Notes: generated by a model not told the origin, from the letters alone. Counted from the stretch's first letter, positions 32,601 to 57,100 are shown. The stretch is DNA of 64,000 nt from Schmidtea polychroa (GCA_044892525.1 CM097885.1:85250001-85314000); one strand, 5' to 3'. Program-made: numbers and translations.

Positions 32601-35600
32601 TTTTTCACCGTTAAAATTTCAAATTTCTTATTCTCGTCTTTTTCCCTGAGAGAAATATTTTGCTCCCTTACTTTGACTTTTGAGTCGCTCATTTGGCAAA
32701 TTGATAAACTCCACAAAACAAAAAGTAATGGAGAAATAATATTATTTTCAAAATTTTAATTTAAATAAACATTTGGTGATATTATTTTACATTTATTTTA
32801 CATTTAATAGGTTAAACATTTATCAAGAGCTTAAATATTTTAAAAAAATCCATAAAGCTCATCTAATCGTTTGAGCTGGCAAAAGGTTATAAAATAGAAA
32901 CCGAATAAGTTATGGTTACCTTCACAGATAGATGATCACATGTATGAGTTATTTGATAAGAATATAAATAATCTAAAACTACTAAAATATTAGTATAAAT
33001 ATCGGTAACTAAAATGTGCACATAATTGATCAATTGAAACTAACATGTATTTTTATTTATATTTACAGAAAAAATGCATTATTAAATGTCGAACCCATAT
33101 ACGGCTCTACCCATATACGGTGCTACCCATATACAGTGCTACCCATATACAGTGCTACCCATATACGGTGCTACCCATATACGGTCCTACCCATATACGG
33201 TCCTACCCATATACGGTCCTACCAATATACGGTGCTACCCATATACGGTGCTACCCATATACGGTCCTACCCATATACGGTCCTACCCATATACGGTGCT
33301 ACCCATATACGGTGCTACCCATATACGGCTCTACCCATATACGGCTCTACCCATATACAGTGCTACCCATATTCGGCTCTACCCATATACAGTGCTACCC
33401 ATATTCGGCTCTACCCATCTACGGCTCTACCCATTTACGACGCTACCCATATACGGAACTAAAATAAAATACATAAAAAACCTATATATATATATATATA
33501 TATATATTGTTGGTTTGAAATTTTAGGATTTTAAAACAATTTTTACTGAATTAAAAGAATTCAATTTAAAGTTTTATTTTTTTAAGTTTGTTTTTACAAA
33601 CAGTTTTTTTAATTGATTGATTACTACTTTTTTCAATTTTAAAGTTATCAGATCCAACTCTTTCAACTATAATCTATTGCAATAGGGCCGATGTCTATAG
33701 CAACATAGCTTTAACCCTATATATAAAGTCTGATTTTTCATACATAGCCTTCATGCCGGTATGATCTGAAAGATGTAACTGGGTAAAAATATCAATTTGT
33801 GATGCAATATCATTATGAGCTACAATTAATTAATGGATGCTTTTTTCATCGATATAGTATAATTTTTCTTCAATTAAAATATATTTCTTAATTTTTTAAG
33901 AAAATCTTTCGAGATTGATTCGTCATACCGAACAATGAATCTGTTCCATATCTCAGAAATTCAATTATATTTTCTTTTGTTCGATGGTAAGTATGACTTT
34001 CATTGGGGAATTCTTTTTAAACTAATTTTATATCTTAAAACTTTAAATAAATAAAAAATTTATTTATAGTTTTTAATTACATTTTTATTTTTACAGTTCC
34101 ATTTATGGGTAGAGTCGTATATGGGTTCGATATTAAATAAAATGGCATCATTGTTTGCAGAAAACACAAATACCCAGAAAAGGAATTTCTTTATTAACGA
34201 CTTTGAAAACATAATCCAACACAACTGTTATCATTTCAAGAATATCACTAGTTACATTTATCACCGGAGACAAATCAGGTTTCATATACTCGTGCTTTTC
34301 TTTATTTCGTGATCCTTCTTTCATTAGATCCAAACCGTAGCTTTCAGATTCATGAGCGATTCCTTGCACTTCGATAGGGACAAACATAGCTCCATTATTT
34401 TTAGTTTTGTCCAATAGTTCATATTTCATATCACATAAATAATCTTCATTTTGTTTTCCAATCGAAATATTACTTTGATCTTTACTTTGTAAATTTGTAG
34501 ACTTATCTTTCATTGTGATATTAGGCAGTGGGATGCTCATTGAATACTTGCATAACGCCTCTGATTCTTTAAGATTTTCGAAATCTTGGATAATACTAGA
34601 AAATGTACAAGAGTTTTTCATTTTGAAATTGTCAGATTTGGGAAAATCAAATGAACGAAACTTGTTATTGAACATATTTTGAATTTCTACTTTATATTTG
34701 TAAGAATATACATCATCATCATGTATCAATTCATTTCCAATGACACGAGAATTTGCGTCAGACCTTCTTTCAATTGCATCAGTTATTTAGAATAGAGCCT
34801 ATGGATGAATATTAATTCCAACGCCAGGTTCCATTTTTTTCTCCATTTTAAACAACATCACAAAATCTCCTTTTAAAACAAACTCAAGCTTCCAGAATAC
34901 AATTTTCTACCAAACCTCTAAATCAAAATCAATCTTTTATAATAAAATATAAAATATACCAATTCTTCGCGTCTGTGTGCGCACATCAATATCACGATAA
35001 TTCGGCACACAGACGCGAGAAAACTCAACAAACAAAAACTGCCAGTCAGAGGTAGACGTCATTCCCCCCTCTGACTGGTCGAAATTCTTTTTAAACTAAT
35101 TTTATATCTTAAAATTTTTAAATAAATAAAAAATTAATTCATAGTTTTTAATTACATTTTTATTTTTACAGTTCCATTTATTGGTAGAGTCGTATATGGG
35201 TTCGATATTAAATAAAATGGCATCATAGACATCATTTTTTAACAGTTTCCCAATGTTCTTGATATTAAAAAAGTCAAAGCTAAATAGCAGTCATTTAATA
35301 CTTGGATTTAAATTTTGTGAGAATTTCAATTACAACTTTAATGATACGCGTTGTTATACATGGTTAACAGGTGAGTGAAGGAATTGGTAAAGAGTAAAAC
35401 TGTTCTATATCCATTATTTTCCTAGGGCAGTTTTATTGGAAGAATCATAGCTTACATCAGTGGTTCTCAATTAATATAAAAGCGCGGAATACTGTCGTAA
35501 ATCTGTCGTAAACGTAAACAATGCCTTCTTATAAGCAAAGAAAATACCACGCGCAACAATAACAAGCAATAAAAACACTTTTATATTTGTATGTTTATAT

Positions 35601-38600: not shown

Positions 38601-41600
38601 ATTTTTGATATTCCACTTCAGATAATGATGTTCATTTTTTATTCTTCAAAATCATTTATGATGTATATTCTTTAGATTTGGTAACAAATACCTCCAAATA
38701 CTTTTTCAATCTTGTCAAGGAAGGAGACAATGTATTAGCGGCTACAGCTGACGAAAATGAACGGCAGCTTTGGGTGCAAGCTATTTACAGAGCAACTGGA
38801 CAAACCCACAAACCGGTGTTAATTGTCAATCAAAATAGTAAAGCAAAACCAGGCACACCGCGCTCATTTAGCGGTGGTGGTAAAATTAATTTTTTTAAGG
38901 CTGGTCAGTTCATGTATTAATTTCATAGATTCCGATAGAGCCAAAAAACACGGATTGGAAAAATTTGTGTCAATTGAGCCATGGAAATTTCCGCATGCTG
39001 ATTTATTTAGAAATCTTCAATCTTTATCTTTGGATTTTCGTCTTAAAGATCAATATGTCTCCTTGGGTTGGTTCAATCCTGGTCAGATGTTCGTGTTAGA
39101 TGAGTACTGTGCACGATATGGAGTGAGAGGATGCTATAGACACCTATGTTACTTGTCGGATCTTCTTGATAAGGCTGAACACGGTACAATGATTGACCCT
39201 GCTCTAGTTCATTACAGTTATGCATTTTGCTCAAGCCATGTCTGNNNNNNNNNNNNNNNNNNNNNNNNNNNNNNNNNNNNNNNNNNNNNNNNNNNNNNNN
39301 NNNNNNNNNNNNNNNNNNNNNNNNNNNNNNNNNNNNNNNNNNNNNNNNNNNNNNNNNNNNNNNNNNNNNNNNNNNNNNNNNNNNNNNNNNNNNNNNNNNN
39401 NNNNNNNNNNNNNNNNNNNNNNNNNNNNNNNNNNNNNNNNNNNNNNNNNNNNNNNNNNNNNNNNNNNNNNNNNNNNNNNNNNNNNNNNNNNNNNNNNNNN
39501 NNNNNNNNNNNNNNNNNNNNNNNNNNNNNNNNNNNNNNNNNNNNNNNNNNNNNNNNNNNNNNNNNNNNNNNNNNNNNNNNNNNNNNNNNNNNNNNNNCCT
39601 AAGTATTATCATGAAATGAAATTGGAATGAATCATTATTTGTGGGAAAATATTGTTTTAGTATGAATAACTGATTAGCTAATCATGTTGCATCATCAATT
39701 ATGTATAATATATAGGAAAAGTACATTTAATAGTAGTAGTGATGACTCTGAAAATATTAAAATAATATCTGATAAAAAAACAACATATTTTTTTAAATTT
39801 TCTCCCAGGTTGCAATGTGAAACATCGGATGAGTAAAATTTTAAATCAATTAGAACAGAATTTTTTATTAAATGTGTAAATTTTGTTTTTCATAAAATGG
39901 CTTCTGTTTGCTTCACATAGAAATGTTAATATTATTTTAATAATCTGAATAATATTCTGGTTATTTGTTCTAATCATTTTTATGATTTTTATTATTACCT
40001 ATTTGATTTGGTCACACATTTTATCTTTTAAATCAAAATTATATTATCAAAATCTTTAAAATAGTAAATTGTTTATATATTATATTTATAAATTATAAAT
40101 TAATGGCTTTGAAAATGTTTATTCAGTCAAATTGACTTTTTTCTCCCCCAAATTTATTATTTATAATTTCTCATGTAATAGATTTTTTATATTATATTAC
40201 ATTTTTGTTCATTTTATTATAAAAATTTTTATGGTACTTACGACAATATTCCTTTGATTGCAGTCCTATATTATTCTGATATACATATTGTTTTCATGTA
40301 TTTCTCCATAGGAAGAGGAGCTTAGACTCAAATTGTCCGTACAAATATTTGGTGCACCTGCGTAGATATAGTAACAATCAGTGCATTTTCTCTGACGGCG
40401 TTCCGGCACCTTTTTTCGCTGAATGATTTTAAAAAATTGACATATGTTTTGGTTTTTTGTCATATTTCTATTTCTGATATTTCAAATAGTCAATTACAAT
40501 CAAATTAAAAGTATTAGTCGTACGCCAAAGCGAGTGAATCATAACTCCGTGCTTTCTATGTGTTTTTACTATTATATAAAACACGCTTACAGTAAATATA
40601 CGCCATTAATATACTACGTCATTAAAACCGTTTCATGTCGTCGGCGTTGTAAATTCACATTGTAAAATAATCAATATATTTAAAATTTCAAAAAATTCAG
40701 CGTCATTTTTTTTCATATAAAGGATAGTACAGATACGTTCCGGGACCTTTTTTCCAGAAAAAAAGCACTGGTAACAATATTTATTATTATTATTATTATT
40801 AGTTTTTTCCTAATTTCTAATTTAACAGATCGGTTCGTGTCTGTTGCGTTCAAGATGCTAAGCTTTCCCATAAATATACGACTAAATCTAAGGAAATTTT
40901 ATTGGCTTGATCAATTAAGACAATTTATCAGCAGACCTTGAATGAAATAATTGAATATAGAGAGGATCATATGATAAATGACAATTGAGATAGTTCATTC
41001 TATATATTAGCAATGAAATATTGGAACTGGTGGATTAGGAGCAATTAATAAATCACTCAATTCTTAGGGATATTGGATTTGCATATTTTCCTTGATCTAT
41101 TTCTCTGTAAATTTATTACTTCGTTCACTCTTATATTTGATCATCATTTTTTCCGTATATTTTTCTCCATGTGTTCATTAACGTTTCTTTCATTGTAGAT
41201 TATTTATTCAAATTGACGAGGAAAGATTTTGAAAGGATTTCTTTCATTTTCTACGATTGATAATCTCAATAGAATTGTCATATTTGCAATTTGAATAATT
41301 GCAAATGAACCGTTGATTAATATTCTTTTATATAGTTTGAAGAATTCAAAACAACAAAATGTTTCAAACGTCTTCTTCAGAATTATCATTCTTTAAATCT
41401 AACACTTTGATCTCGTTAATAGCTATGACTTTCTTTTTATTCTTTTTTTAATCATTATGTTCATATTTCTCCATATGAATTAATTATTAATAAACTATAA
41501 GTTTTATTAAAGGTTTTTGACTCTTCAGTATATTGAAAAGCAAGAATTTCTGAATTAAAAATTACTATTATGCATATGGCGTCTATATTTATGCTGCGGA

Positions 41601-44600
41601 CAAAATCGACGAAACAACAGCAAAGGCACTTTTTGCCAAGATGGCAAGGCATTCAGCAGAATTTTAGAATTTTAAAAATTCCAATTCGATATTATTCTTT
41701 TTAAAAATGACGAAAAATAGTCGACCAATAGCGATTTCTTGCATACCATGTGGAGTTGGGACTGTGCTGGTTTACTCGTTTTCAGATTCATTTAACTTAT
41801 CGTGACATATAGTATATTTTTCCAGGTTTATTTTTAAATATAATTTTTGCGTTTTCCTTGCATTGAATAATATCATTAATGAACTTTTTGCATTCTTAAC
41901 TATCTTTAATGAACTCTAAGCTTTTAAACCCATGATTAATTATATTTTAAAATTTTTAATAAATACCATTTTTCATTTAGAATATTTTACTTAAACAGAT
42001 TTTTAAGTAAGTAATTTGATTGATTAAAACAGGGTTCCCCAAACTAAGGCCCACGCAGTAGTTTTTATGGCCCACTCAAATACAAATAACTAAAATTAAA
42101 AATATTTTTAGAAAAATTTAAAATAAACTAAGAATTTTTTTTTACATTTTTTTAAAAAATATTTTTAAAAACACTACATGCTTAAATATATTATATTACT
42201 ACTCTATTTAAAATTTTAAATCTAGGCGTCTGTTAACTTCCTTACGTTGCATAAGATTTCTTTTTTGCTAAACTCGCAAAAAATATTTCTCAGAACTTTG
42301 AAATTTTTTTTTGACAATTAAACGTTATTTTCCTATGATAACAACCAAGTAAGCTATATTTAGCACGAACTTCTATATTTATCGAAAATTCATCAAATAT
42401 ATTACCATGAAAGTTAAATGATTACTGATAGATCAATTAGTGTTCAATTTTTTAAGAATATAGTAATTGTTTCATGGTTTGTTAATTTATTGTGAAAATA
42501 ATAAAAATTTAAATAATTAAAATAGTAATAACGGCTATATAATGATGTCGAAAAAAAGAAAAGTAGATGATGAACGCCGCGTATTTAATGAACAATGGTC
42601 AATTGATTATTTTTTTACATTGGTTAATAATAATTGTATATGTCTGATTTGTATATATATATATATATATACAGCGCCGGCTCTAGCATTAGTAGCGCCC
42701 CGATGCGAAACTCATTTTAGACGCCCATTTATTTTATTGGTTTTTTGGAATTAACGTAATTTAATTGGCAATATTAAATTTGTAATAAAAACATTAAAAA
42801 ATTAATAATAATTCTTTTCCAAGTGAAATACAGGTTTTATTTTGTTTATATATTTTTTTATTTTATTGAAACAATATTATAATATACAAAAATTACATAA
42901 CATACATATATTTTGTATAAAAATTGACAAAACTATTATTCTAGATATTTACTTTTCTAGCTTTTAAACTGGCAAATTCATCAATTAAATTATGTATATC
43001 TAATTTGTCGCATATATCACTTTCAATCGATATCATTGCTAAACCAACTAATCTTTCTTGTGAAATTGTTGATCTTAAATAATTTTTAATTAGTTTAAGC
43101 TTCGAAAAAGATCGTTCTCCGCTAGCAACTGAAACTGGTAAAGTTAAAAATATTTTAATAGCAATTACAAAATTGGGAAAAATGGAATCCAGTAGATTTT
43201 TATATATATATATTGCAAGATGTTTAGTGGGTTTTCAAAGTCTTTCAAAAATTCCTTTGCTATTTTTATTTCATTAAATAATTCTGTTGCAGATATATCT
43301 TTTTTCTCGCCATCGGTTAGCATTATTTCTAAATCAGAACAATGTTTTTTTAATGTATTATCATCCATTTTGTTAATTTCTTTTATATTATGTATAAATT
43401 CAAATTTTTCACTATATTTTGTGAAAAGATTAAACCTTTCTTTTAAAGAATTGATAGTAATATCTAAAATTGGCAGAAAAAATGATATTTTATATTTAAG
43501 TATCGGATCAACTGGCGTTTCGTCTACAGATTCATAACCAAAAATTTTTTTCTTTCTTCTTCGTAACGTATTATCTTTGAATTTCGCAGGTATTTCTAAA
43601 TCAGCTGCTATATTTTCTGCCGTTTGAAGAATAAGACTAAAATTTTCATCGGATCTATATTCTTCAATAAATTTAATAAGACTATTTAACGCAACTGAAG
43701 AAACATTTAAGTTTTGATTTGGATTTTGGAGCAGTTTACTAACAACGTTAACTTTACTTAAAACATCGTACCAAATAACCACTGAACATATAAATTCATA
43801 CTCTTTTATTTTGAAAGCCACAGCCTTAGCTTCATGCTTTGTATTATTATCTATTTCTAGGTTTTCATAAATGTCAACTAAAGCATCTAAAATTTCAGCT
43901 ATTTCAAACCTAAGTGGACGAAGGGCATCGACTCTTGATTCCCACCTGGTGGCTGACAAAGGTTTTACTGTAATTTTAGTATTTTTTTTTTAAGAACTCC
44001 CATCGTTTTGTTGAAGCGCTAAAGAAATTATAAATTGTTTGAATAGTGGAAAAGAAACTAAATGATTCTGTGTTAATTTTGGCTGCATCATTCACTACTA
44101 AATTAAGTGTATGTGCAGCACATGGGACGGAAAATGCACGAGAATTCAAATTTAAAATACGTTTTTGGACCCCATTATTTTTCCCATGCATATTTGCGCC
44201 ATTATCGTAACCTTGTCCACGTAGATCATTAATATTCAAACCTAAATCTTTAATGTTGTCAATAAGATAAGTTGCTAAACCTTTTCCTGTGGAGTCACAT
44301 ACTTTTAAAAATCCCAAAAAATGTTCGCTTATTGCAACTTCATTATTTTCATCTTTATTGACAAATCTGGCTATAAATGTCATTTGTTCGTTATGACTAA
44401 TATCAGGAGTGCAATCTAATATTAGAGAAAAATATTTGGCATTAATTATCATTTGAATAATATTTTGCAAAATTTTCGAAGAGATCAACGATATTATTTC
44501 ATTTTGTATAGTTTTGCCTAAATAATGAACTGTTTGTGTCTCCTTTTTTTGTATCTTTGCTAAATGATTTGCTATTACTATGTCAAATTTAGAAAAAAGT

Positions 44601-47600
44601 TCTACAAATTTTAAAAAGTTACCGTTATTTTTTTCATAGATAGTATCTGACGAGCCACGCAGAGACAGGCATTGTCTGGCAAGATATTTTATGATTTCGA
44701 CAATTCTCTCCAAAACAGCGTACCAATGTTTCTTTTCAACTGCGTATACTTTTACGAGTTCAGCATCTATTGTAGTTAAGTTGTTCATTTTCTTTTTTAA
44801 TTGAGTCCACTTTAAAAAACAATTAACATGTAATGTACTAACTTCATGAGCTGCAAGTGTTTTTGACAAATTTCTCCAGCAACTAAAACCATTTATAATC
44901 AAATGCTGGTTTCCTTCTATTTGATTTATAAACAATTTACAACAAAAACAGAAAACACGGTTTGCTGAACTTGAATAAACTAACCATGATCTTGGTATAA
45001 TTTCATTATTAGGTAATTTACGATTGTAATAATAATTAGTAAAACTTCGTCCATCATCATCACGGGGATAAACTTCTTTCCTTATTTGCATTGGTCCTTG
45101 CTCAATAATAATTTTTCTAATTTTATCATTAATAAATTTAGGCCAAGTTGCGGGATCAATTGAATGAAAATCAGCACTATTACTTATAGTTTCAGTTAAA
45201 TGTATGGTTTGAAGCTCTTTGTTAGATGAAGATGTTATTTCTGTTTGTAAATTTATAGATTGTGTCTCATTAGTGGCATTATTTCTAACTTCACCATTTG
45301 TGCTATCCTCTGGAATAATCTGATCATCCGTTAACGTTATTGTAGGTATTGTCAAATTTGCTTTTTTTAAATATTGGTTAAGGCTTCCCTGATTTTTTTG
45401 TTCCTCCAACTCTCTCTTCGCCTTTCGTTTTCGATTTTCACACCCGGATAATTTTGTCTTTGAATTCATATTTTATGATATAGGTAAGCTAATAAAAATT
45501 TTTTTAATTAAAAAAATATAAATTTTAGAAGTAAAGATAAAAATAATTAAATAATACCTACCACCGTACAATGATTCAATTCCGCAAAATAACTAATGTA
45601 CTGAAACAAAACACTTTTTTACTATTAAACTGTACTGAATTTTATTTTACTATTAAAATTTTAATATTAAATTTTTTTTTATTAGCGAAAAAAGTTTACC
45701 AAATAACAACTGAACTGATTGAAAACTGAATAGAACTGATAGACTTTTAAAATAATTTTTTTTAGCATTAATTTTTTTAATCGAAATAACTAAACCGAAT
45801 ATAGCAGGCCGTTTCAAAATAAATTTATGCATGTATAATTTATTTTGTTTTGCGAAATAATTAAACAATTCTTAAACACTTCGAAACCTAGTAGGCCAGT
45901 AGTTTTTCAAGGAAATTTTATTTAAAAAAAAAAAAAATTTCTTATTAAAAAAAAATTTGTTAATGGTTTTTTTGTTAAATATTAAAAAGAAACTAAAATT
46001 CTAAATTGTTTAGCGCCCTTTCCGAGAGGCGCCCCGATGCTTTGCATCCACCGCTTCCNNNNNNNNNNNNNNNNNNNNNNNNNNNNNNNNNNNNNNNNNN
46101 NNNNNNNNNNNNNNNNNNNNNNNNNNNNNNNNNNNNNNNNNNNNNNNNNNNNNNNNNNNNNNNNNNNNNNNNNNNNNNNNNNNNNNNNNNNNNNNNNNNN
46201 NNNNNNNNNNNNNNNNNNNNNNNNNNNNNNNNNNNNNNNNNNNNNNNNNNNNNNNNNNNNNNNNNNNNNNNNNNNNNNNNNNNNNNNNNNNNNNNNNNNN
46301 NNNNNNNNNNNNNNNNNNNNNNNNNNNNNNNNNNNNNNNNNTCTAATAATTATCTGTCAATTATTAGTAAACTGTAAAAAGTGTTATCAAAATGCCTGTA
46401 TTTCCGAATTCCGTTAACTCTCAGAACTCTACAATAAATAGTGAACTCATTATATCTCCTTAATATCAGCCTATTTACTTCCAAAAATATTATTTTAACT
46501 TTTACTTTTTGAAATTAACATTCCAAGTACATTTTTACTGTTATTTTAGGATTTTTGCCCGAGCCATACTATTATTGTATTATAGTATTATAGATAATAT
46601 TTAATAATTGATATTAACCAATCACCGTTTAGACAGGACATGAGTATCCGCACGGTACTAACTGAAGAAAGGGATAAATTTCTCGAAGTTAAGGCAAGAT
46701 TGTCTGCTTTATTAGAAAGACAAATTACCGAATTTCGATATTATTTTCCTTTTGGAAGACCCGAAGGTGCTCTCAAACAAACATTAGGCCTTTTAGAGCG
46801 AGTAAATTTCATCATTATTTTTAGCTTTTATACATTTTATTGAAATTTATCGACTATGGCAACGATCATAGCCATTATGATAATGGATGGCATAGATCAA
46901 ACCTGACAAACTCAGACGAACGCCTTTCAATTTAATTGATAAATAATTCAGAATTTCTTTCTTTAAAATTTCAATTAATTTATTAAATTTTCTTTTAAAA
47001 ATGTTCAATTAAATTGATTAATTTATCTATCGATTATTTGAAGGGAAATTTGAAATGAAAATTATCTGCATTGTGAAAAGATTTTCCGGTAAAATCAATT
47101 ATTTCCCGTGCTTTTTTAATTTGTTGAAAATAATTAATCAATTCCTTTAATCGATAGCATCAATGGTTTTTTAATTGAAAAATATAAACAAATTGAAATA
47201 TTTTTACTTCAATACAATGAGACAGTTGTTTGAATGTCGTGAGTTTGGAAAATTGTTCTCCTAGACGAGAATTTTTCATATCAAAATTCTGAATATTGTT
47301 TGAAAATGTATTTCGCAATTGCTCTGGAAACGAAATTTGCTTATCATTTATTTGTCTTATATATCAAGCACTGGAGATTNNNNNNNNNNNNNNNNNNNNN
47401 NNNNNNNNNNNNNNNNNNNNNNNNNNNNNNNNNNNNNNNNNNNNNNNNNNNNNNNNNNNNNNNNNNNNNNNNNNNNNNNNNNNNNNNNNNNNNNNNNNNN
47501 NNNNNNNNNNNNNNNNNNNNNNNNNNNNNNNNNNNNNNNNNNNNNNNNNNNNNNNNTTATAAGATTATTACACCTGTTTGCACGGAATATAAGCATCTAT

Positions 47601-50600
47601 AATAAGGGTTATAATTTATTTTTAATTACTTTTCAACTTTTTCTTAGGAATTTATACATGAAATTTATTTTATAATTATTTTGGAATTATTTCGATATAA
47701 TTTAAGTCAGATATATTTTTACTATGGTTTATTAAAGAAAGTAATCGCCAAACACATTAATTTTTTTAATAGATTAATTAAAGTTCTTCTGAAATGATTT
47801 GTTTGCTGTTACCTTTTTTGCCTTTAGAAATTTCTACACATTTTTTGTATTTGTAAATTGTTTCAATTGATTTTTTCGTGATTCCGTAATCTTCCAAAAT
47901 CATAACAATCTTGGCCATTTTCGAAGGCATCAATTAATCGAATTTTTTTTATGTTTTGAAATTCTAATAAAATATTATTTTTTTCAATTAAGTTATTAAA
48001 ATTTACGATTTTTTTTTATCGAAATCAAGAGGTGGAAGGATCTGGTTGAATATTTGAAATTTTACCTTAACAGAAATATCTAAAATTCTATAGAAATATT
48101 AAATTTATAATATAATTTTATAAATAAATCTTACGAAGTTTTTTGTAATAAAGTTTAAACAATTAAGTTTTTAATGCTTTTATTCCATGCAACATTTCTA
48201 TATATCAAAAGCTTATATGCATATTTTATTAAGTGTTGTGTTTGTGTGTTAAACTACTTTTTTCCGCCACCTTCTCACTTTCTATAGCAGTAGTTCTCAA
48301 CCTTTTGTGTTGGCGACCCCATTGATATTTTTTTACGACGTCGTGACCCAAATATTTTTAAGGAAAATATAAAATACCAGAAGGATTGGAAACAATTTTT
48401 CACAGATATATATATTTTTATATATATGGCGACCCCATCAGAGGTCGCAACCCCGAGGTTGAGTGTATACTTTTATTCCATGCAACATTAAAATTCTAGA
48501 CACAGGTAAGTTTGTGTATTTTAATAATATAAGAGTATAAATTATTCTATATATTATAGATACTTTTATTCAAGGCGCCCATCATCGAATCGATCACCTA
48601 TTTTGTAGTTCTAAAATAATTAAACTGAAATCACACTTATTTTTCCTAAAATAATATAAAAGGCGTAATATAATACCTAAAGGTATTTTAGTCACAATCA
48701 AACCCTAGTTCACTTTTGCATCCCAACAAACGCTCCAACTCAAAGAAAAATTGGAAAGAGAATGGCTAACATTGTACATCCATACATGTTATAAAAGGAT
48801 CAGCTATTGCGATCCTTTAACTCTAAGAGATACAATCTGTTGCCAAAATCTCTCAGCTTTCACAAAACACAAAAGAGTTCGTAGAGAATTACTTTTTAAA
48901 TTAATATAGCTCCAATAGACCCAATATACAAATAAGACACGTCAACAAACCAGTAATATACGTACTCTTCCCTTTCTTAAACAGACATGTAATATAATCA
49001 GATCTTACTTCTACCATACAGACTTACCAGTACATATTTGTCTAACCTTCACAACTGCTGCACCTTTGAAATCACAACTTCGGAAATTTCAAAAATCTCC
49101 AACATCAGACCTGTTTCACCGAGATTGTTTCTGCCGCTCCTCTGCCAGATGTTTTTGCTTTTCAAAAATCATTGTATATCAAGTCACTTGCACAAGATGT
49201 GATCCAACGTACATAGGGGAAACACATTAAACATTCCGAACAAGACTCAATGAACACACCAAAAACAAAACCAGTAATTTTCAAGAACACTGAAAAAAGT
49301 ACACAAATTAACACCACTCTTACAGGAAACAAAAACGCAAAATACAAAATGAGTTGATCTCTTCATCAAAAAACACGAATCCTCCATCAACGTTCAACTA
49401 ACTTAAATTTCAGGGACAATTGAAACTTAAAAATTAAAATTAAAATTGACCAATAATATTATTATAAATTACAAAATAAATTAATTTTATTATTATTAGT
49501 TAATTTTTGTCATAATCTGGTTTGCTTGTATAATTATTGTAATAATTCAGTTGGTTTAGCAGATAGTTGTAAATAATATTCCCTATAATTCACTATCTGA
49601 ATAAGTTTCACGATTCCTCTGAGCATAGGATTACTGCTTTATTAATTAGGAGTTATACAGTTCAAAGCTTACTGCTGCCAAAACAAGTAGAAACGCCCAA
49701 ATTTGTCATTATGTTAGAAATTTTCTAAATTTTATGTTTACTCATGTGCAAAAACGAATTTCGAAATTTGTCATATTATGTTTTGTGAAATAATCAACAT
49801 AATTATCTATCGTATCCTATCTATGTTTTAGTCAAGTTTTTATAATTGCAAGTTAACCATTTTCCAGCATAATATTCTCTAGAAACTAGATTTACGTTGC
49901 TGAATGTCGAGTAAATACTTAATATCTAATTCTAATATTTTAATTCTTATTAGAATAATTTGATATAATTGTACTAAATGTGTGAGGTATTCCCACCAAT
50001 CAGTTGAAGTCTCTGAAATATCCATTCGGTTATCTGTATCAATTTGACCAATATCAAAATAAATATTTGATTGCTCCTAACATAAGTTAAATCACTGAAG
50101 GAACACTTATACTTAGTTTTCCAATCCTTACCTTTAGAAATTGCGTCCAACTCTCGTATACATTCTCAGAATCTGAGAGTACCACCAACCGGTGGTCAAC
50201 ATAGAAAGCTCATAGAATGTTTTTTTAACCATAGACAATAGTTAAAACGCAGTTATTGTAAATTTGAATTTAGCAAGGTAAACTGGGTAAATAAAATTGT
50301 ATCCAAGCAGTTAAATCCCCAAATAACCGAAGTATACATAATAAATTAATTTAACTGTAGTCACATTCCATTTGATTGCAAGTTTCGAGTTTCGACCGTT
50401 CCTATTCCTTCATAAATATTATAAGTATAAAACATTATAAAAAATATCCAAAAGTCCATTAGTTAAGTTTGATAGTAGCAAATTGAATCACTATTTTATA
50501 AATTTTCAATATGACTTTTCTTCCATAAATTTTTGTCACTCATTCCGATGCAATTTTTTGGGAATTTTCCTGTCACCACTGTTTGTAAATATCAATAGAA

Positions 50601-51328
50601 TAATCAGTTATTTTCTCATTCTGGTCCCTGGATTTCTTATGATTATCCTCATTATTATAATTTCTATAGCATTGTCTGATTAAATGCCGGGTTTTCACTA
50701 TAGAATAAAGTAAAATGGAATATTTGTAATACATTGTCACAACATAATTTGCGCATTGCGTTATTCTCTTTCGCCTTTCTATTATTAGTACTATTAATAA
50801 TGGGAACACTTGAATGAGACAAATCATGAAAATATCTTTCCCATATAATTCATAATTTATTCCCGAAATTTTGTTGATTGATTTTCTGGACTGTGAAGTG
50901 AAAATATTGAGATCCTATTTATTAATTGAGCATCGTTGTCCAGAATACGAAACCTCTTGATGGCATTTCGTTAGGAAAAACCTAATAATCTAAATGTTGT
51001 TATTGAAAATGGAAAAATAAAAATATTTATTATATATGTTTATTCTCAATATTTAATTAATTTTCAAAAAACATTTTCTATGGTAATTCCTGTCTTGATA
51101 TTAGGTATTAATGAAAGACTCTGGTGCTCCAGCATCTGCTGAAGAAGTACGATTCGTCATCAAAGGTTGTTTAGAAAAAGCCGCCCTAGTAAATTATACT
51201 AGGGTGTCAGAATATGCAAATATCGAAGGTTTATCATTTTAAATATTTAATGCATATTATTGCTTTCATTTTACTAGCGCAAGATTCCAGTAACAAAAAT
51301 GGTATTTATATTTTGTTTAATTTGAATA

Positions 51329-51374
<46 letters not shown>

Positions 51375-51422
51375 AGAAAATGTATATTATTAAGAACAAT
51401 CGATAATATGGTGAGAGAAATG

Positions 51423-51503
<81 letters not shown>

Positions 51504-54104
51504 AAGCACAGTTATAACAGACACAAACAATCAAATGAATGATCCCAACCAATCTTAGTGATATATTTCTCCTTATCGTAATTCCCATTTAATTAGTCAA
51601 TCATATCAAATATTTGTTTCTTGATAAATGTTTGATCTGTTGGTAATTTGGGCTTGATGAATATTATTTAATAAATTATTTTTTAAATATATATAATAAC
51701 ATCACTAAAATAACAATTTGTGTATTTTAAATTTATCAAATGCAGTTTTTATTCAAAAGTCAACGGTATATAAAAAATAATGGAAACAACGGTACTTCCG
51801 TGTTATCTTACCCCCAAAAATTAAATTATAAAATACAATTAAAATAACAATATAAAAAATGAGAGAAGTACATAATGACGTTATTGAACATGAATTTATT
51901 AAGGCTATCTGTGATTTATGTGATTATGTGAGTTATGTGGCGCAAACGTGTTCTAAGCAACAGTGCCGATGTGTTCGACACTATTCTCAACGACATTGTG
52001 GTTTTCTGGCCACCTGGATGACCATTTACAAACTCTTTACAAACATTTGCTGAGTTTGTAACTGTGATTTAGAAAATAAATATAATAATTATATGTGTTC
52101 TTTTTTAACTTAATTTTTGGGGGTAAGATAACACGGAAGTACCGAAACAACTCATTAGTTAGAAATCAAACTGAAAAAACCTTTGATTCCTGGCCCGTGT
52201 ATGGTACTGAATATTAATTAATTATTTCAATAAAATACTATTGGATTAACTTATTGGTTAATTGATAAAGAACAAAACATTTTCCCCATTTTTATAAATA
52301 ATAATCTTTATTGTTATAAATTACCATTGTATACGGTAATAAGAATGCAGAAGGAATTTAAACTGTGTAAATAACTCTCAAGATGAATGGAAACGGGGAA
52401 ATAGAAATTATTAAAGCAAGATGTCGTGTCAGTATCGTATTCAGTTGCAATAAAACCCTATTGTGAATTGCCATTTTCCAGGTAGGTCGCCCATCAACAA
52501 CATTTTGGAATTTCATGACTACGAGACAGGACTAATATTTCTTTTTACTTTCATCATGATTAATCACAAATTTATAAAATTTTATTCAATGAATGCATCC
52601 TTAATATTTCAGAACGAACTGTGAATGACATTATCCATTTGGCAGAACTTTGTATAGAGGTTCTTAGGCAAAATGAGGAACACCACGCAGAGGTATAAAC
52701 GAAGGATTATAATTATTCTGTTGTCAGTTTTAATTGTTGTAAAGCCGCATTACTCTGGGCTTCCAGTTATAAAGGGAATTATTTGTTGTCCCTTAATGTT
52801 TCTCGGTTGATGTCGTATTTNNNNNNNNNNNNNNNNNNNNNNNNNNNNNNNNNNNNNNNNNNNNNNNNNNNNNNNNNNNNNNNNNNNNNNNNNNNNNNNN
52901 NNNNNNNNNNNNNNNNNNNNNNNNNNNNNNNNNNNNNNNNNNNNNNNNNNNNNNNNNNNNNNNNNNNNTGTAAGGATGTTAGCAAATTTGCCAATATTAA
53001 TCATTCTTAATGGAAATCGTGAAGTCGGATTGTTCAAATGAAAAAGAAGGCAAAAAATACTACTATCAGTAAAATCATTAACTTTTTGTTGACCTTTGAT
53101 CTTTTTCTTTTTTCTATGTTTCCTCTCTCCCTGTAACACAAATTTGATCTATATTCTTTTTAAAAATTAAAGAAAAAATAGTCCCTTCATTAAGTTCTTA
53201 CCTGTTTTTTTAAGAAGTAATTACTGTTGAAAAGGTAAACTATGATGTAAAAAGATATTGGATATGTAAAAGAAATTATTCTGAAAAAAGACTTCTACAT
53301 GTGACTTACATTTTTATTTATTTAGTAATGAAAATAATTTTCTAGAGTTCTTAATAGTTGTCGTATGAATAATTAATGTTGTGTTTTACAGATTTAGAAG
53401 CTGAAAACTGAAGACAGAAAAATTAGTTAATTTTCATGATATTAGCAGTTAAGATGTAATATGGGTTATAAGCCAATATGTGACAATTTGGGCCTCGATT
53501 TAAATTTTGATTGTGCATTCTCTAATTGTAAAACTTCCAAGGCTTAACTTCTCCATATATATATATAATCTATTTATGAAATGTTTTGTTACTTTTTTAA
53601 AAAAATAAGTTTTAATTACAATTAGCTTTAAGAAACCTTTTCATTGACTGACACTTGGTTAGCCTTACAACAATTATTAGTGTCTCAGAATCTTCGAAGT
53701 GACTATTTATTTGTCTGCTTATTTCAATTCCTTCTTCAAACGAATCGTGGTTGATTTAGTGATTTGGTCACTTCATGTTATTAAATATTCGAAATCCTTA
53801 TTATTATACAATTCATATCATATCTTTGCATTTTTTTGAATTAATTAATTATAAATAATAATAATAATAAATAATTACTTAATAATAAAAATAAAAATTT
53901 TTAATAATAAATTATATTTTACAGTCATTCGCTTGGTTCAGTGATTTACTCGTTGTACATACTGAGATATTTTGGTCACTTTTTGCTGTGGATATGATGG
54001 ATGTTTTGCAACAACAACCTCAAGATAATTGGGATAGTTTCCCATTGTTCCAGCTATTAAACGATCATTTATTAATGGATGGTATGATTTAATAATTATA
54101 GTAC

Positions 54105-54152
<48 letters not shown>

Positions 54153-57100
54153 AGATGGCCCCTGGTTTGGGGCATCATTTTTCACCCGGGGGTGCCCCAG
54201 AACTTTAAATGTAAAATAAATAAGTTTCATGATAAAAGCATTTATTTTTTAATCAAAAAATCGGTAATTTTGATTTCACAAGCTTTTCTAATATCATTCA
54301 AAAGTTTTTCTAAAGAATCTGAAATAAATATTCTAATATTTTCCTCTAATTTTTCTAATTGTTTTAAAACATCTGAAGTTTCAACATCATTTATAATCTC
54401 TTCGCCATTGTAAAATTTAATGTTTTCAATCCCATCAAGATTTTCAAATGTTTCTTCTATTACGTCATTGATATTTTCTTCAACTTCATCCTTTATAATG
54501 TCACCAAGGTCTGATTTACGATATTCATTAATTTTATTCCAACAATTTTTGATAGTTTCAACCCTTAACATTTCCCAAGCCTCTGAAATTATAACAATAG
54601 CTTGTTGTATATTTAATTTGGAAAGAAAATTCGATTATTCATAATTATTAAGAAAAAAATTCATGAGTATATAAGTTTTGAAAGTTTTTATGATGCCCAT
54701 ATCAAAGGTTGAATAAGTGAAGTTGTTTTTGAATAAAAATAATAACTTGACATTTAAACATTCCAATGATTTATGACAACTGGTATTATTAAGAAGGAGA
54801 ACTATTTTTCTATTTTGCTTGATCATTTCAGTATTTAACATTCTCAGCCATGTTTGAAATATTTCTGTTGTCATCCAAGCATTTTTTGAAGATAAATATA
54901 AAACTCTGAAATCTTTAAGATTAAAGTTTTTCATACATCGGGGATTTTTCTATTTTTCAATAGTAAGTGGTTCTAGTTTTTCGTCTTCTAAACTACAAAA
55001 CAAAAATAAAGTAATATTTCTTTGATTTTTTAGCTACATTATAACTGTCACTTTTCTCAACAAAAGATTTAGATGGAAGATTTTTTATAAATAACGCCGT
55101 TTCATCACAATTAAATGTTACGTTGTCCGTATTCTAAAATGTATTTATCATATGCAAAGTAAAATTCATCTAAACCCGATTTGTCTGCAGATTTGGTTTC
55201 ACCACAGATCTTTTTGAACAACAACAATTTACATCTATCTAACTAACCTTTAGACGCACAAAAATCTTTAATAGACATTTTAATAATTTAATAGACACTT
55301 TTTTTCCAATCATTTTAAGTACTGGTCCATTTATTCAAATATCATCTTCTCTTAATTTTAAAAAACTTTCGTATACCATAATTGTTTCGGCTGATTTTGA
55401 GCTCGCGTCAATGTGCACGTTGTTGTGGTGGTTTTTTTTGTATGTGTGTACATACAGACACGGACAGGGTTATTTTTTACTCTTTTTGTTTGTATTTGAA
55501 TTTCGGAATTTTCTCCCTTCCTCGCGTTTGTGTGTGCATAATTTTGGAATTATTATTTGGTTTATCGAAATTGATTGACATTTTGGAATTTTTCGATATT
55601 ATGTTTTTGTTTGTATACTTGGAAAATATGTCAACATGTGTTTACATTTTAAATTTGAAGATTAACAGATTTCTATGAAATTATTAAATTAATTGTTTAA
55701 TGTCAAAATAATGCCAATGCTGCTGTTCGAAACGAACGTTATGGAATTGCGTTCAATGAATATAAACGATATTAAATATATTAAATTCTATGCCGTTAGA
55801 GACTGATGACGAGGAGAAAATTCGATCGAGTCATGTTGTGAAATTATATTTGAATATGGCTCATGGTGATTTGAAATTAAACCGGGAACCATCTGCAATC
55901 AAATGTTGCAATACGGTGTTTGCTAAGCAGTCTGTGAATGCAAGAGCCCTTTATCGAAAAGGAAAGGGTCTGATGATTATTAGAGAATTTGAAGCTAGTA
56001 TTTCAAAAAATTGTCAAACTCGAGATCATGTTTTGTTGCCTCATACAGTTGGAGTCAAGCAAATGATAATTTATGTAAATAAGACCTTGATTCAGACTTC
56101 ATTTGAATTTTATTTGTTCATTAATAATAATAATAATACACAAACATCTTTTGTGATTAATTATGGATGAGAAACTTAATTTTTGTCAATAAAATTTAGA
56201 AAATTTGAAAAATGGTAAATTCCATCTACAACTAGTAGAAATTTTTACTCCTCAAGTTGTCAGATATGTGGATCTAATGGAGGCATCAATAGGGCAATCA
56301 ATTCAGAAATCATTCGAGCATGAAGCCTGCAATCAGTCAGTAAATATAACATCTGCTGCCGGTTTAACGAATATGACATCGATGAGTGTAGGCTCGTTAG
56401 TAACTGCAGCAGCCAGCTCAGTTGTTGGTAACAGCAACTTTAGTAATGATAATTTTCCAGATGGGGGTAATGCGTTCGGTATTTCATCTGGCGGTAGCAA
56501 TCCACAGCCATTTGATGTTAAAACTGACGATTTACTATGGAAACTTGAAGCACTTCAGAATTTCATTAAAGAACTTCATTGGCCGGAAGAAATATTTGCC
56601 GAACATTTAGATAACAGATTAAAGATGATGGCAGCCGACATGATTGAAGCTGCAGCCCAAGGGTGATTGAATTATCGTAGGAGAGATTTGATTAGCTTTA
56701 ATATTTTACAGAACATTGAATTGCTTCGATTCCATGTTAAAAATGTCCACAAAAACTACAGATTTTATTTTGCATTCTGAATGCTGTGCTATGCTAAATG
56801 CCATCATTAACATGAAAGCCAGTGTATTCAAGCTCTGCACTATGAATATGGGAACCAATATTGTAAGACTACAAAATAATTGTAANNNNNNNNNNNNNNN
56901 NNNNNNNNNNNNNNNNNNNNNNNNNNNNNNNNNNNNNNNNNNNNNNNNNNNNNNNNNNNNNNNNNNNNNNNNNNNNNNNNNNNNNNNNNNNNNNNNNNNN
57001 NNNNNNNNNNNNNNNNNNNNNNNNNNNNNNNNNNNNNNNNNNNNNNNNNNNNNNNNNNNNNNNNNNNNNNNNNNNNNNNNNNNNNNNNNNNNNNNNNNNN

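What the first reader, a model, noticed from the sequence alone, without database searches (positions are those of the whole stretch)
34960..55680. Two unrelated chimeric host-gene fragments share a hairpin leader: candidate gene-capturing mobile family
Seen: upstream of the eIF3f chimera (minus strand) is TTTTTGTTTGTTGAGTTTTCTCGCGTCTGTGTGC..GCACACAGACGCGA, a perfect 14-bp hairpin (34967-35018), preceded by a second 11-bp hairpin (35042-35078). Upstream of the FKBP6-like/EF1A chimera (plus strand) is CTCGCGTCAATGTGCAC..GTGTACATACAGACACG (55402-55462, imperfect hairpin, 13/15 identical in the 5' arm). A second copy there reads TTTTTGTTTGT..TTTTCTC..CTCGCGTTTGTGTG (~55484-55537). In both loci a possible short GT-AG intron (about 42 and 56 nt) lies between leader and coding fragment. 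CGCG-containing matches are unlikely by chance in DNA this AT-rich. Inference: a non-autonomous element whose structured 5' leader acquires and fuses pieces of housekeeping mRNAs, analogous to Pack-MULEs, Helitron capture or Penelope terminons, but without the diagnostic ends of those classes. The 13/14-nt match AGACGCGAAGA(A/T)TT to the hairpin beside the hammerhead at 16338 hints, weakly, at a Penelope link.
Basis: partly seen in the sequence, partly recalled or inferred. Interest (0 to 1): 0.8.

Follow-up and report, generated by a model that had tools for sequence, protein, structure and literature searches.

The report
Mosaic host-gene pseudogenes sharing an upstream module
Two decaying pseudogenes in or beside the introns of a CAPS (calcium-dependent secretion activator) gene are each stitched in frame from pieces of unrelated host genes and share a short upstream sequence; this looks like reverse-transcriptase template jumping, but one window cannot show that they belong to a mobile family.

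Summary

**Locus 1 (34009-35226, minus strand)**
- It has two perfect hairpins (fold z = -6.6).
- It is a three-part mosaic. The eIF3f 5'UTR and N-terminus come first. A fragment of an unrelated serine-rich protein follows (59% identical to P0001). The middle part of eIF3f comes last (64% identical to P0002).

**Locus 2 (55383-56167, plus strand)**
- It fuses an FKBP5-type TPR fragment in frame to EF1A residues 120-155.

**Junctions and the shared module**
- All three junctions are in frame, in the same orientation, and overlap both partners by a few residues.
- A module of about 90-140 nt upstream of both mosaics is each locus's best match in the window. The window-wide P is only about 0.02-0.05.
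- Only locus 1 folds. The "hairpin" claimed at locus 2 is no better than shuffled sequence.

**New here**
- Locus 1 lies between two direct copies of a 143-nt repeat (96.5% identical), with a third, inverted copy nearby.
- This is the partial-tandem layout described for Penelope-like elements that carry foreign sequence.
- The repeat has no hammerhead, and I found no convincing target-site duplication.

**What could not be settled**
- No poly(A) tail and no common termini were found.
- Copy number could not be tested, because no search reached this genome.

**Verdict:** real mosaics, most likely made by template jumping. Whether they form a family is open.

The parts
35083..35226 (-). E1: upstream direct copy of a 143-nt repeat (pseudo-LTR-like). 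Its outer edge may extend about 8-15 nt further.
   Evidence: 96.5% identical to 34009-34151 over 144 columns. Sequence read.
35042..35078 (-). Outer perfect hairpin (11-bp arms, 15-nt loop). It lies 4 nt after the end of E1, at the 5' end of the unit.
   Evidence: The arm 11-mer is unique in the window at 0 mismatches.
34955..35041 (-). Leader module L1: T-rich 11-mer, TTTTCTC, then a hairpin with 14-bp perfect arms (34967-35018) that extends to about 20 bp.
34152..34890 (-). Mosaic pseudogene of locus 1, given as one part. It is a broken gene with two in-frame stops near its start, followed by a 212-codon open stretch (34151-34786). Segments: eIF3f 5'UTR and N-terminus, about 34890-34735; P0001-like fragment, about 34735-34395; eIF3f middle part, about 34403-34190; about 40 nt of unknown origin.
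34009..34151 (-). E2: downstream direct copy of the 143-nt repeat. The stop codon of the mosaic open stretch lies at its first bases.
33066..33600 (+). E3: inverted, more diverged copy of the repeat. Its two 16-nt subrepeats have expanded into a satellite of about 25-30 units (33088-33480).
   Evidence: (D1; inverted pairs I1 at 88%, I2 at 86%, I19 at 77%).
55383..55475 (+). L2a: the copy of the leader module with both diverged hairpin arms. No stable fold.
55483..55616 (+). L2b and the start of L2c: tandem partial copies of the module with a period of about 120 nt. L2b keeps the T-rich 11-mer, TTTTCTC and the 5' arm but lacks the loop and the 3' arm.
   Evidence: (D5).
55766..56167 (+). Mosaic open stretch of locus 2 (134 codons). 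FKBP5-type TPR fragment at about 55805-55999, then an EF1A fragment at about 55979-56086. The two overlap in a shared EFE(A/S) motif. A (TAA)5 run lies about 35 nt after the EF1A part.
54245..55330 (-). Context: a 5'-truncated pogo/Tigger transposase remnant that abuts locus 2.
   Evidence: DDE_1 at 1.4e-16 for 54638-54949. The extension to about 55330 is by eye only. Pfam finds nothing in the leader region.
53895..56663 (+). Context: the CAPS intron that holds locus 2, bounded by consecutive MUN-domain exons at 53895-54089 and 56205-56663.
16292..16366 (-). Candidate minimal type I hammerhead (16292-16333) next to a 10-bp CGCG hairpin that shares an 11-mer with L1.

Best explanation
These are two separately inserted, decaying mosaic pseudogenes. 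Each was assembled when a reverse transcriptase jumped between RNA templates. It copied part of one abundant host mRNA, switched at a few bases of microhomology to another, and at locus 1 switched back. The last thing it copied was an RNA that supplies the shared 5' module.

At locus 1 the product was fixed as a partial tandem: repeat E, then leader plus mosaic, then repeat E, with an inverted E nearby. This is the insertion layout of Penelope-like elements that carry foreign sequence between pseudo-LTRs. The perfect palindromes at the 5' junction would be self-priming or snap-back products.

**Shown**
- The mosaic composition.
- All pieces are in the same orientation and frame.
- Each junction shows a few residues of overlapping homology to both partners.
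- The direct and inverted repeats exist.
- The upstream module is shared.

**Inferred**
- An RNA intermediate.
- Which enzyme class made the mosaics.
- That the module is a template rather than a target site.
For: **Mosaics**
- ORF1 residues 15-131 match P0001 (4e-28, 59% identity), an unrelated 442-aa protein.
- ORF1 residues 129-201 match the eIF3f protein P0002 (1.7e-19, 64% identity).
- The ORF1 N-terminus and about 45 nt of 5'UTR align to eIF3f contigs L001 and L002.
- In ORF2, FKBP51 residues 306-370 match at 5.5e-7 and EF1A residues 120-155 at 2e-7. The two matches overlap at ORF2 residues 72-78.

**Junctions**
- The two homologies at junction 1 meet at window position 34735, within 2-4 nt of each other.
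- All five gene pieces are sense-oriented and in one frame per locus. By chance this would be about 1/8 for orientation and 1/27 for frame.

**The eIF3f piece**
- Its homology starts about 45 nt upstream of the ATG and does not continue upstream in L001. This is what a copy that begins at a transcript's 5' end would look like.

**Repeat layout**
- E1 and E2 are 96.5% identical with the same boundaries. E3 is inverted.
- Two direct plus one inverted pseudo-LTR, palindromes at junctions, unrelated sequence carried between the repeats, and microhomology junctions are all described for Penelope elements (PMC3846280, PMC8557442).
- Recurrent non-coding 5' partners in template-switch chimeras are described for LINEs (PMC2104539).

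**Shared module**

**Reverse-transcriptase sources in the window**
- A candidate hammerhead.
- A sub-threshold RNase H match at 18507-18794.
- GIY-YIG-like ORFs at 48919-49227 and 61208-61480, identified by eye only.
Against: - There is no poly(A) or recognisable LINE tail at either 3' end.
- No convincing target-site duplication was found. Locus 1 has only a possible 4-nt one if E3 is included. Locus 2 has none.
- E contains no hammerhead and is not similar to the Penelope-like remnants in the window.
- The inverted copy lies on the 3' side behind a 400-bp spacer, not at the 5' end as is typical.
- Locus 2 has no terminal repeats at all.
- Whether the fragments lack parental introns cannot be tested. 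The relative's eIF3f has a single intron, and it falls in the replaced part.
- The module similarity is modest (window-wide P about 0.02-0.05) and partly TG/CA-rich.
- The module matches no known RNA family.
Confidence: 0.4

Rival explanations
1. A dedicated non-autonomous mobile family has a structured 5' leader as its cis-acting end. It repeatedly acquires and fuses host mRNA pieces and then spreads as a multi-copy family.
For: - Two loci with different cargo share the module in the same orientation relative to the cargo.
- At locus 1 the module lies inside the repeat-bounded unit.
- All fusions are in frame, and there is a mild deficit of stop codons. About 4.0 and 1.95 stops are expected at 10% neutral divergence in the two open stretches. 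None is seen there, and two are seen in the 20 codons upstream. This would fit selection on a translatable master transcript.
- The EF1A piece is only about 64% identical to an almost invariant protein, yet it is still open.
Against: - Only two copies occur in 64 kb, and the profile search finds no third.
- The loci share no 3' end or termini.
- The locus 2 copies are degenerate, tandem and unstructured.
- No related chimera turned up in 1.8 billion representative proteins beyond single parental-type hits.
- The stop-codon argument depends on a divergence that is not known.
Confidence: 0.2
2. DNA-level repair mosaics. The palindromic TG/CA-rich module is a fragile site in the CAPS introns. Breaks there were patched by microhomology-mediated, template-switching repair that copied short stretches from elsewhere.
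For: - Every junction that could be inspected shows microhomology.
- Perfect palindromes lie exactly at the edge of the locus 1 insert.
- Local direct and inverted duplications and a satellite expansion surround locus 1.
- Locus 2 abuts a truncated transposon.
- There is no poly(A) and no target-site duplication.
Against: - All pieces have the same orientation and frame.
- The eIF3f piece begins near a plausible transcript start and includes the 5'UTR.
- Leaving one template and returning to it collinearly is more typical of copy-choice on RNA.
- At locus 1 the module lies inside the duplicated unit, not outside it.
Confidence: 0.15
3. Two unrelated mosaic pseudogenes whose upstream resemblance is a coincidence of short CGCG-plus-(TG)n words in low-complexity DNA.
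For: - Stringent local alignment does not separate locus 2 from the background.
- BLASTN finds only short words.
- The two matches at locus 2 are one event, because they are tandem copies with a period of about 120 nt.
- Another CTCGCGT at 58062 has no further similarity.
Against: - Locus 2 is the single best hit among about 1,000 tiles under three scoring schemes, on the correct strand and directly upstream of the only other chimera.
- The 13-mer with up to 2 mismatches, and the exact T-rich 11-mer, occur nowhere else in the window.
- The order of the words is the same in both loci.
Confidence: 0.2
4. The leaders are simply the native promoters or 5'UTRs of functional eIF3f and FKBP genes, and the open reading frames are real exons.
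For: About 45 nt upstream of the locus 1 ATG is homologous to the eIF3f 5'UTR of relatives.
Against: - The eIF3f reading is broken by two in-frame stops, and its core is replaced by foreign sequence.
- The FKBP piece is an internal C-terminal fragment, so its upstream cannot be that gene's promoter.
- Normal eIF3f exists in relatives with a different structure.
- The upstream of L001 is not homologous to the module.
- dN against the relative is 0.27 for the window copy and 0.09 for the L001 copy.
Confidence: 0.03

Closest known systems
Penelope-like elements that carry foreign or host sequence between pseudo-LTRs (Adineta vaga Pen3a-NRPS case, PMC3846280; general PLE insertion structure, PMC8557442)
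   Same: - The unit is preceded by a copy of its own 3' end, forming a partial tandem.
- An extra inverted copy is present.
- Palindromes lie at the junction.
- The internal sequence is unrelated to the element.
- Joins are microhomology-mediated.
- Chimeric open reading frames are attributed to template jumps.
   Different: - The repeat here is shorter (143 nt against 180-220).
- It has no hammerhead.
- It shows no similarity to any reverse-transcriptase-bearing element I could see.
- The inverted copy is on the other side, behind a spacer.
- The target-site duplication is at best 4 nt.
- The cargo is a mosaic of several mRNA pieces, not one intron-bearing gene.
- Locus 2 lacks the repeats.
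LINE template-switch chimeric retrogenes (U6-L1 type in mammals; WEIRD-MGL and tripartite chimeras in Magnaporthe, PMC2104539)
   Same: - Copies of different transcripts are fused head to tail in one orientation.
- Double switches occur.
- A recurrent non-coding RNA of unknown function acts as the 5' partner.
   Different: - There is no LINE, SINE or poly(A) 3' part here.
- There is no 10-20-bp target-site duplication.
- Here one template is left and re-entered collinearly, and all fusions are in frame.
Pack-MULEs, other Pack-TIR elements and Helitron gene capture
   Same: Fragments of several unrelated host genes are joined inside a repeat-bounded unit.
   Different: - These capture DNA and have diagnostic ends. 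Pack-type elements have TIRs with fixed-length target-site duplications. Helitrons have 5'-TC...CTRR-3' ends with a 3' hairpin and insert between A and T.
- None of these ends is present at either locus.
Templated insertions and microhomology-mediated repair at double-strand breaks (my own knowledge of the field; reviews turned up)
   Same: Short pieces from distant loci or transcripts are joined at microhomologies, and palindromes lie at the edges.
   Different: Such patches are usually shorter. They are not expected to be uniformly oriented and in frame, or to share an upstream module.

Membership tests
Penelope-like element-mediated capture (pseudo-LTR-bounded unit) | Partial tandem: the unit is preceded by a copy of its own 3'-terminal segment (pseudo-LTR). 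| tested here: met
   E1 (35083-35226) and E2 (34009-34151) are 96.5% identical with the same boundaries.
Penelope-like element-mediated capture (pseudo-LTR-bounded unit) | An inverted truncated copy adjacent to the unit. | tested here: inconclusive
   An inverted E3 exists at 33066-33600. It lies 400 bp beyond the 3' repeat rather than abutting the 5' one.
Penelope-like element-mediated capture (pseudo-LTR-bounded unit) | A hammerhead ribozyme motif inside the pseudo-LTR (canonical PLEs; absent in Naiad). | tested here: not met
   No hammerhead match at E-value up to 10 in 34850-35250. The only candidate in the window is at 16292-16333.
Penelope-like element-mediated capture (pseudo-LTR-bounded unit) | The terminal repeat is shared with an autonomous RT plus GIY-YIG element of the same genome. 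| tested here: not met
   This was tested within the window only. E scores at background level against the flanks of the GIY-YIG-like remnants. A genome-wide test is not possible with these tools.
Penelope-like element-mediated capture (pseudo-LTR-bounded unit) | A target-site duplication around the whole structure. | tested here: inconclusive
   Only a 4-nt match flanks 33066-35238. There is none around E1-E2 alone.
LINE template-switch chimeric retrogenes | Parts are copies of different cellular transcripts, directly fused in the same orientation. | tested here: met
LINE template-switch chimeric retrogenes | The 3' part is a LINE, SINE or mRNA 3' end with poly(A) or a LINE tail. | tested here: not met
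   There is no A-tail at 34152 or after 56086. The only candidate is a (TAA)5 run near 56121-56137.
LINE template-switch chimeric retrogenes | A short (about 10-20 bp) target-site duplication. | tested here: not met
   Locus 1 is flanked by a 143-nt repeat with element-like boundaries, not a short duplication. Locus 2 has none.
LINE template-switch chimeric retrogenes | A recurrent 5' partner RNA present in many chimeras. | tested here: inconclusive
   Two of two chimeras share the module. Genome-wide recurrence is not testable.
Pack-MULE / Pack-TIR DNA transposons | Terminal inverted repeats at both ends, plus a target-site duplication of fixed length. | tested here: not met
   No inverted repeats bound either mosaic. 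The E3/E1 inverted pair has only 4 matching flank bases.
Helitron gene capture | 5'-TC ... CTRR-3' ends, a hairpin 10-12 nt before the 3' end, and insertion between A and T. | tested here: not met
   In either orientation the unit's ends at 34152 and 35082 lack these motifs and flanks.
LTR retrotransposon / TRIM transduction | TG...CA repeats, a primer-binding site after the 5' repeat, a polypurine tract before the 3' repeat, and a 4-6-bp target-site duplication. | tested here: not met
   Read directly. E ends in AATT, there is no tRNA-complementary site, no purine run before E2, and no flank duplication.
Functional eIF3f / FKBP / EF1A genes | An intact, collinear domain structure of the family. 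| tested here: not met
   Only fragments match. The MPN core of eIF3f is replaced, and there are two in-frame stops.

The most novel reading that the evidence does not exclude
A lineage of retro-mobile, non-autonomous units in which a conserved structured 5' module and short pseudo-LTR-like ends frame in-frame mosaics of abundant host mRNAs. The open reading frame stays open along the master-copy lineage because only translatable, decay-resistant transcripts get copied. This would be a gene-fragment shuffling element of Penelope type, without the known diagnostic ends.
Probability: 0.12. Interest if true: 0.75.

Novelty: new variant of a known kind. Interest (0 to 1): 0.45.

Why it matters
If the shared module and the 143-nt repeat recur genome-wide in front of different gene mosaics, this would be an animal retroelement system that shuffles pieces of housekeeping mRNAs in frame. 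That would be a route to new chimeric genes. It would also give a handle on how Penelope-type reverse transcriptases jump templates.

If they do not recur, the loci are still clean natural examples of double template switching with microhomology. In that case they are ordinary intronic pseudogenes. They would matter mainly as an annotation caveat, because they could be mis-called as eIF3f, FKBP or EF1A genes.

Tried and rejected
- **A "third copy" of the repeat at 254-339.** This BLAST hit at 78% is only AT-rich low complexity. It does not share the repeat's informative part.
- **L001 upstream region against either leader.** The score equals the shuffled median. The leader is therefore not a conserved eIF3f flank.
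- **L001 3' tail against the repeat E.** The alignment looks collinear, but its score (209) is below the random window tiles, which reach 235.
- **Leader 19-mer in JGI metagenomes.** It gave two hits in GC-rich, unrelated contigs with no further similarity, so these are chance. The degenerate hairpin pattern in IMG/VR gave none.
- **ORF1, ORF2 and P0003 in other collections.** They have no relatives in GTDB genomes or IMG/VR.
- **Word-based protein searches with ORF1 and ORF2.** These found nothing. Exact look-ups of window ORFs are not on record.
- **The leader of locus 2 as the missing N-terminus or 5' end of the adjacent pogo remnant.** No Pfam support and no terminal inverted repeat.
- **The leaders as known RNAs.** No Rfam family and no tRNA.
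- **An upstream extension of the FKBP piece in another frame.** I saw this by eye, but it is not supported, so I make no frameshift claim.
- **The second-best module hit at 49.1-49.4 kb.** It is T/G-rich chance similarity.
- **CTCGCGT at 58062.** It has no further similarity and sits before an ATG followed by a splice-donor-like GTGAGT.
- **Leader ORFs as gene fragments.** No family matched.
- **Synonymous divergence for dating.** It is saturated against the only relatives available.

Full report
**Setting and gaps**

The window is AT-rich eukaryotic DNA (about 25% G+C) with 17 runs of N. Neither locus, nor the repeats that flank locus 1, contains an N. The five gaps named in the finding lie in the 20 kb between the loci. 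Only the spacing and relative orientation of the loci therefore depend on scaffolding.

That scaffolding is supported by a large plus-strand CAPS gene (calcium-dependent secretion activator), whose exons appear in the right order across the gaps:
- the PH exon at 38609-38917 (PDB 1wi1, 1.5e-13);
- MUN profile positions 74-135 at 53895-54089;
- positions 145-240 at 56205-56663 (4.7e-23; PDB 6a68, 1.6e-24);
- positions 300-377, weakly, at 57154.

Locus 2 lies in the intron between two consecutive MUN exons, in the sense orientation, about 100 nt before the next exon. Locus 1 lies 3.4 kb upstream of the first verified CAPS exon, on the opposite strand. I read 4998-5285 as an N-terminal CAPS exon, which would make locus 1 intronic too. 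That rests on my memory of CAPS and found no support from a tool.

**The hairpins and the shared motifs**

The two perfect hairpins at locus 1 are exactly as described. Together they fold far better than shuffled sequence (-55 kcal/mol, z = -6.6). The inner stem extends to about 20 bp.

The word matches at locus 2 are also real:
- The 15-mer of the 5' arm, with up to 3 mismatches, occurs only at the two arms, at 55402 and at 55521. The expected count is 0.1.
- The 13-mer with up to 2 mismatches has the same four sites.
- The T-rich 11-mer occurs exactly three times, all within the two loci.

The two matches at locus 2 are one event, not two. They are diverged tandem copies with a period of about 120 nt.

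As whole sequences the leaders are weakly alike. BLASTN finds only short words, and a stringent local alignment does not separate locus 2 from the background. With three more permissive scoring schemes, the tile upstream of the second chimera is the single best hit in the window, on the correct strand. Its scores sit at or just above the 95th percentile of the window-wide maxima for shuffled queries.

The alignment covers the T-rich start, the 5' arm, a loop of similar length and the 3' arm. About 74% of L1 positions match. L2b looks like L1 with the loop and 3' arm deleted.

I accept the module as probably homologous. However, the "hairpin" at locus 2 is not real in a thermodynamic sense (z = +0.34 and +0.91). 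A profile of the three copies finds no fourth copy in the window. No Rfam family or tRNA matches either leader.

**The cargo of locus 1**

The 212-codon open stretch at 34151-34786 (minus strand) found nothing in a word-based search. It gave only marginal eIF3f hits in the PDB. An exhaustive HMMER search returned three proteins:
- P0001, a 442-aa serine-rich protein with no family assignment. It matches ORF1 residues 15-131 at 59% identity.
- P0002, an eIF3f C-terminal half (MitMem_reg domain, 7.8e-22). It matches residues 129-201 at 64%.
- P0003, another rearranged eIF3f copy.

DNA alignments to the source contigs place eIF3f homology at 34881-34735. This includes about 45 nt of 5'UTR and the start codon. 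P0001-gene homology begins at 34735. The two homologies meet within 2-4 nt of each other. The second junction falls within ORF1 residues 128-131.

The locus is therefore eIF3f, then a foreign gene, then eIF3f again. All three pieces are in the sense orientation and in one frame.

The eIF3f-derived start is in frame with the long open stretch but is interrupted by two in-frame stops. The region needs no intron to be read.

The copy is under relaxed constraint. Its dN against the relative's eIF3f is 0.27, compared with 0.09 for the L001 copy. Synonymous sites are saturated.

**The cargo of locus 2**

The 134-codon open stretch at 55766-56167 matches two families:
- FKBP51 residues 306-370 (the TPR region) over its residues 14-78, at 5.5e-7;
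- EF1A residues 120-155 over its residues 72-107, at 2e-7.

The overlap is a motif, EFE(A/S), that both parents share. The fusion is again in frame and joined at microhomology.

The EF1A piece is only about 64% identical to a nearly invariant protein, so the copy is old. An upstream extension of the FKBP part that I saw by eye is unsupported. No poly(A) follows the mosaic. A (TAA)5 run lies about 35 nt after the EF1A homology.

Upstream, the module abuts a 5'-truncated pogo/Tigger remnant on the other strand (DDE_1, 1.4e-16). Nothing suggests that the module is part of that element.

**What frames locus 1**

A 143-nt repeat, which I call E, flanks the leader-plus-mosaic on both sides. The two copies are in direct orientation and 96.5% identical (34009-34151 and 35083-35226).
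- The stop codon of the mosaic open stretch lies at the first bases of the downstream copy.
- The outer hairpin starts 4 nt after the upstream copy ends.
- A third, more diverged copy lies inverted at 33066-33600. Its two 16-nt subrepeats have expanded into a satellite.
- All three copies begin at the same point. E is therefore a discrete unit, not an arbitrary duplication.
- E has none of the marks of an LTR: no TG...CA ends, no primer-binding site, no polypurine tract and no 4-6-bp duplication.
- The unit has no Helitron or TIR ends.
- Only a 4-nt match flanks the whole 33066-35238 structure.

**Mechanism**

Three features point to copy-choice by a reverse transcriptase moving between RNA templates. 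The pieces are uniformly oriented. One template is left and then re-entered collinearly. The eIF3f piece begins near a transcript start. This mechanism is established for LINE-derived chimeras, including tripartite ones with a recurrent non-coding 5' partner (PMC2104539).

The layout of locus 1 matches what is described for Penelope-like elements (PMC8557442, PMC3846280):
- a full unit is preceded by a copy of its own 3' end, forming a pseudo-LTR;
- an extra inverted copy is often present;
- palindromes at junctions are attributed to self-priming;
- 5' joins are microhomology-mediated;
- unrelated or host sequence is carried between two direct and one inverted pseudo-LTR.

The window also holds a candidate minimal hammerhead at 16292-16333. 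Beside it is a CGCG hairpin that shares an 11-mer with L1.

Several results count against filing the loci as Penelope-borne:
- E has no hammerhead.
- E is not similar to the Penelope-like remnants in the window.
- The inverted copy is on the unusual side.
- Locus 2 has no repeats.

I therefore say that the loci work like template-jump mosaics with a Penelope-like insertion layout. I do not claim that they are members of that family.

**Are the open frames maintained?**

I simulated neutral change on the present sequences in memory, for counts only, and kept nothing. At 10% divergence, about 4.0 new stops are expected in the 212-codon stretch (P of none = 0.019). About 1.95 are expected in the 94 gene-derived codons of locus 2 (P of none = 0.135). 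None is seen in those stretches, and two are seen in the 20 codons upstream.

With three of three in-frame junctions, this hints at past selection for an open frame. The true post-capture divergence is unknown, so I treat this only as support for the novel case.

**Family status**

I could not test it. No search reached this genome or close copies:
- protein searches;
- exact look-ups;
- metagenome, viral and prokaryote-genome scans.

The only related material is four items from other organisms: three contigs (L001-L003) and one protein without DNA (P0004).
- L001 is a second, independently rearranged and truncated eIF3f copy in an AT-rich relative. Its internal deletion ends at the exon 1/2 boundary seen in L002.
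- This shows that eIF3f-derived rearranged copies recur in this group.
- However, the upstream and downstream of L001 are not significantly similar to the module or to E.

**Verdict**

The chimeras and the locus 1 hairpins are real. The shared module is probable. The introns and the locus 2 hairpin are unsupported. The mobile-family reading remains open and would be quickly settled by a whole-genome search.

Noticed in passing
window 35042-35078 and L002:1121-1158: The outer hairpin of locus 1 shares a 9-mer and an 11-mer, in the same order, with the last bases of contig L002. That site is about 200 nt downstream of the eIF3f stop codon in a GC-richer relative. In the window the words lie antisense to the eIF3f-like ORF and upstream of it. 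The 11-mer is unique in the window. My rough chance estimate is about 0.01. It may be the edge of a repeat shared by both genomes.
   Followed up: partly
L001:441-863 (ENA metagenome contig, 26% G+C): A second rearranged eIF3f copy in a related AT-rich organism. It has the N-terminus, then an internal deletion that ends at the exon 1/2 boundary seen in L002, then a truncated C-part. A short tandem repeat lies upstream.
   Followed up: partly
window 42944-45472 (-): A hAT-type transposase (DUF4371, 1.9e-21) is split into at least three long open pieces of 498, 274 and 97 aa. It lies in a CAPS intron and looks like a young, nearly intact element. A weaker hAT dimerisation-like ORF lies at 58520-58804 (-).
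   Followed up: partly
window 16292-16366 (-): A candidate minimal type I hammerhead (19.4 bits, below Rfam's threshold of 34) with a perfect 6-bp helix I. It sits directly beside a 10-bp CGCG hairpin and abuts an assembly gap.
   Followed up: partly
window 17232-17322 and 17645-17852: Clusters of CGCG in short tandem repeats with a period of about 15 nt. They hold about half of all CGCG sites in this CpG-poor window, about 1 kb from the hammerhead candidate.
   Followed up: no
window 48919-49227 (+) and 61208-61480 (-): ORFs that by eye carry a GIY-YIG-like motif, as in the endonuclease of Penelope-like elements. Pfam gave no hit, so this is unverified.
   Followed up: partly
window 33088-33480 (+): A 16-nt satellite of about 25-30 units. 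It grew out of two subrepeats of the 143-nt repeat E, which has only two units in its other two copies.
   Followed up: yes
window 58030-58090 (+): TTTTCTC ... CTCGCGT is followed by ATG and a consensus splice-donor-like GTGAGT. This may be the first exon of a real gene nested in or after CAPS. It is unrelated to the leaders beyond the 7-mer.
   Followed up: no
L002:1-1172: In the relative's eIF3f gene, exon 1 is AT-rich and exon 2 is strongly GC-rich, with a 55-nt intron between them. An ATATCGATTT motif is repeated three times in the 3' flank.
   Followed up: no
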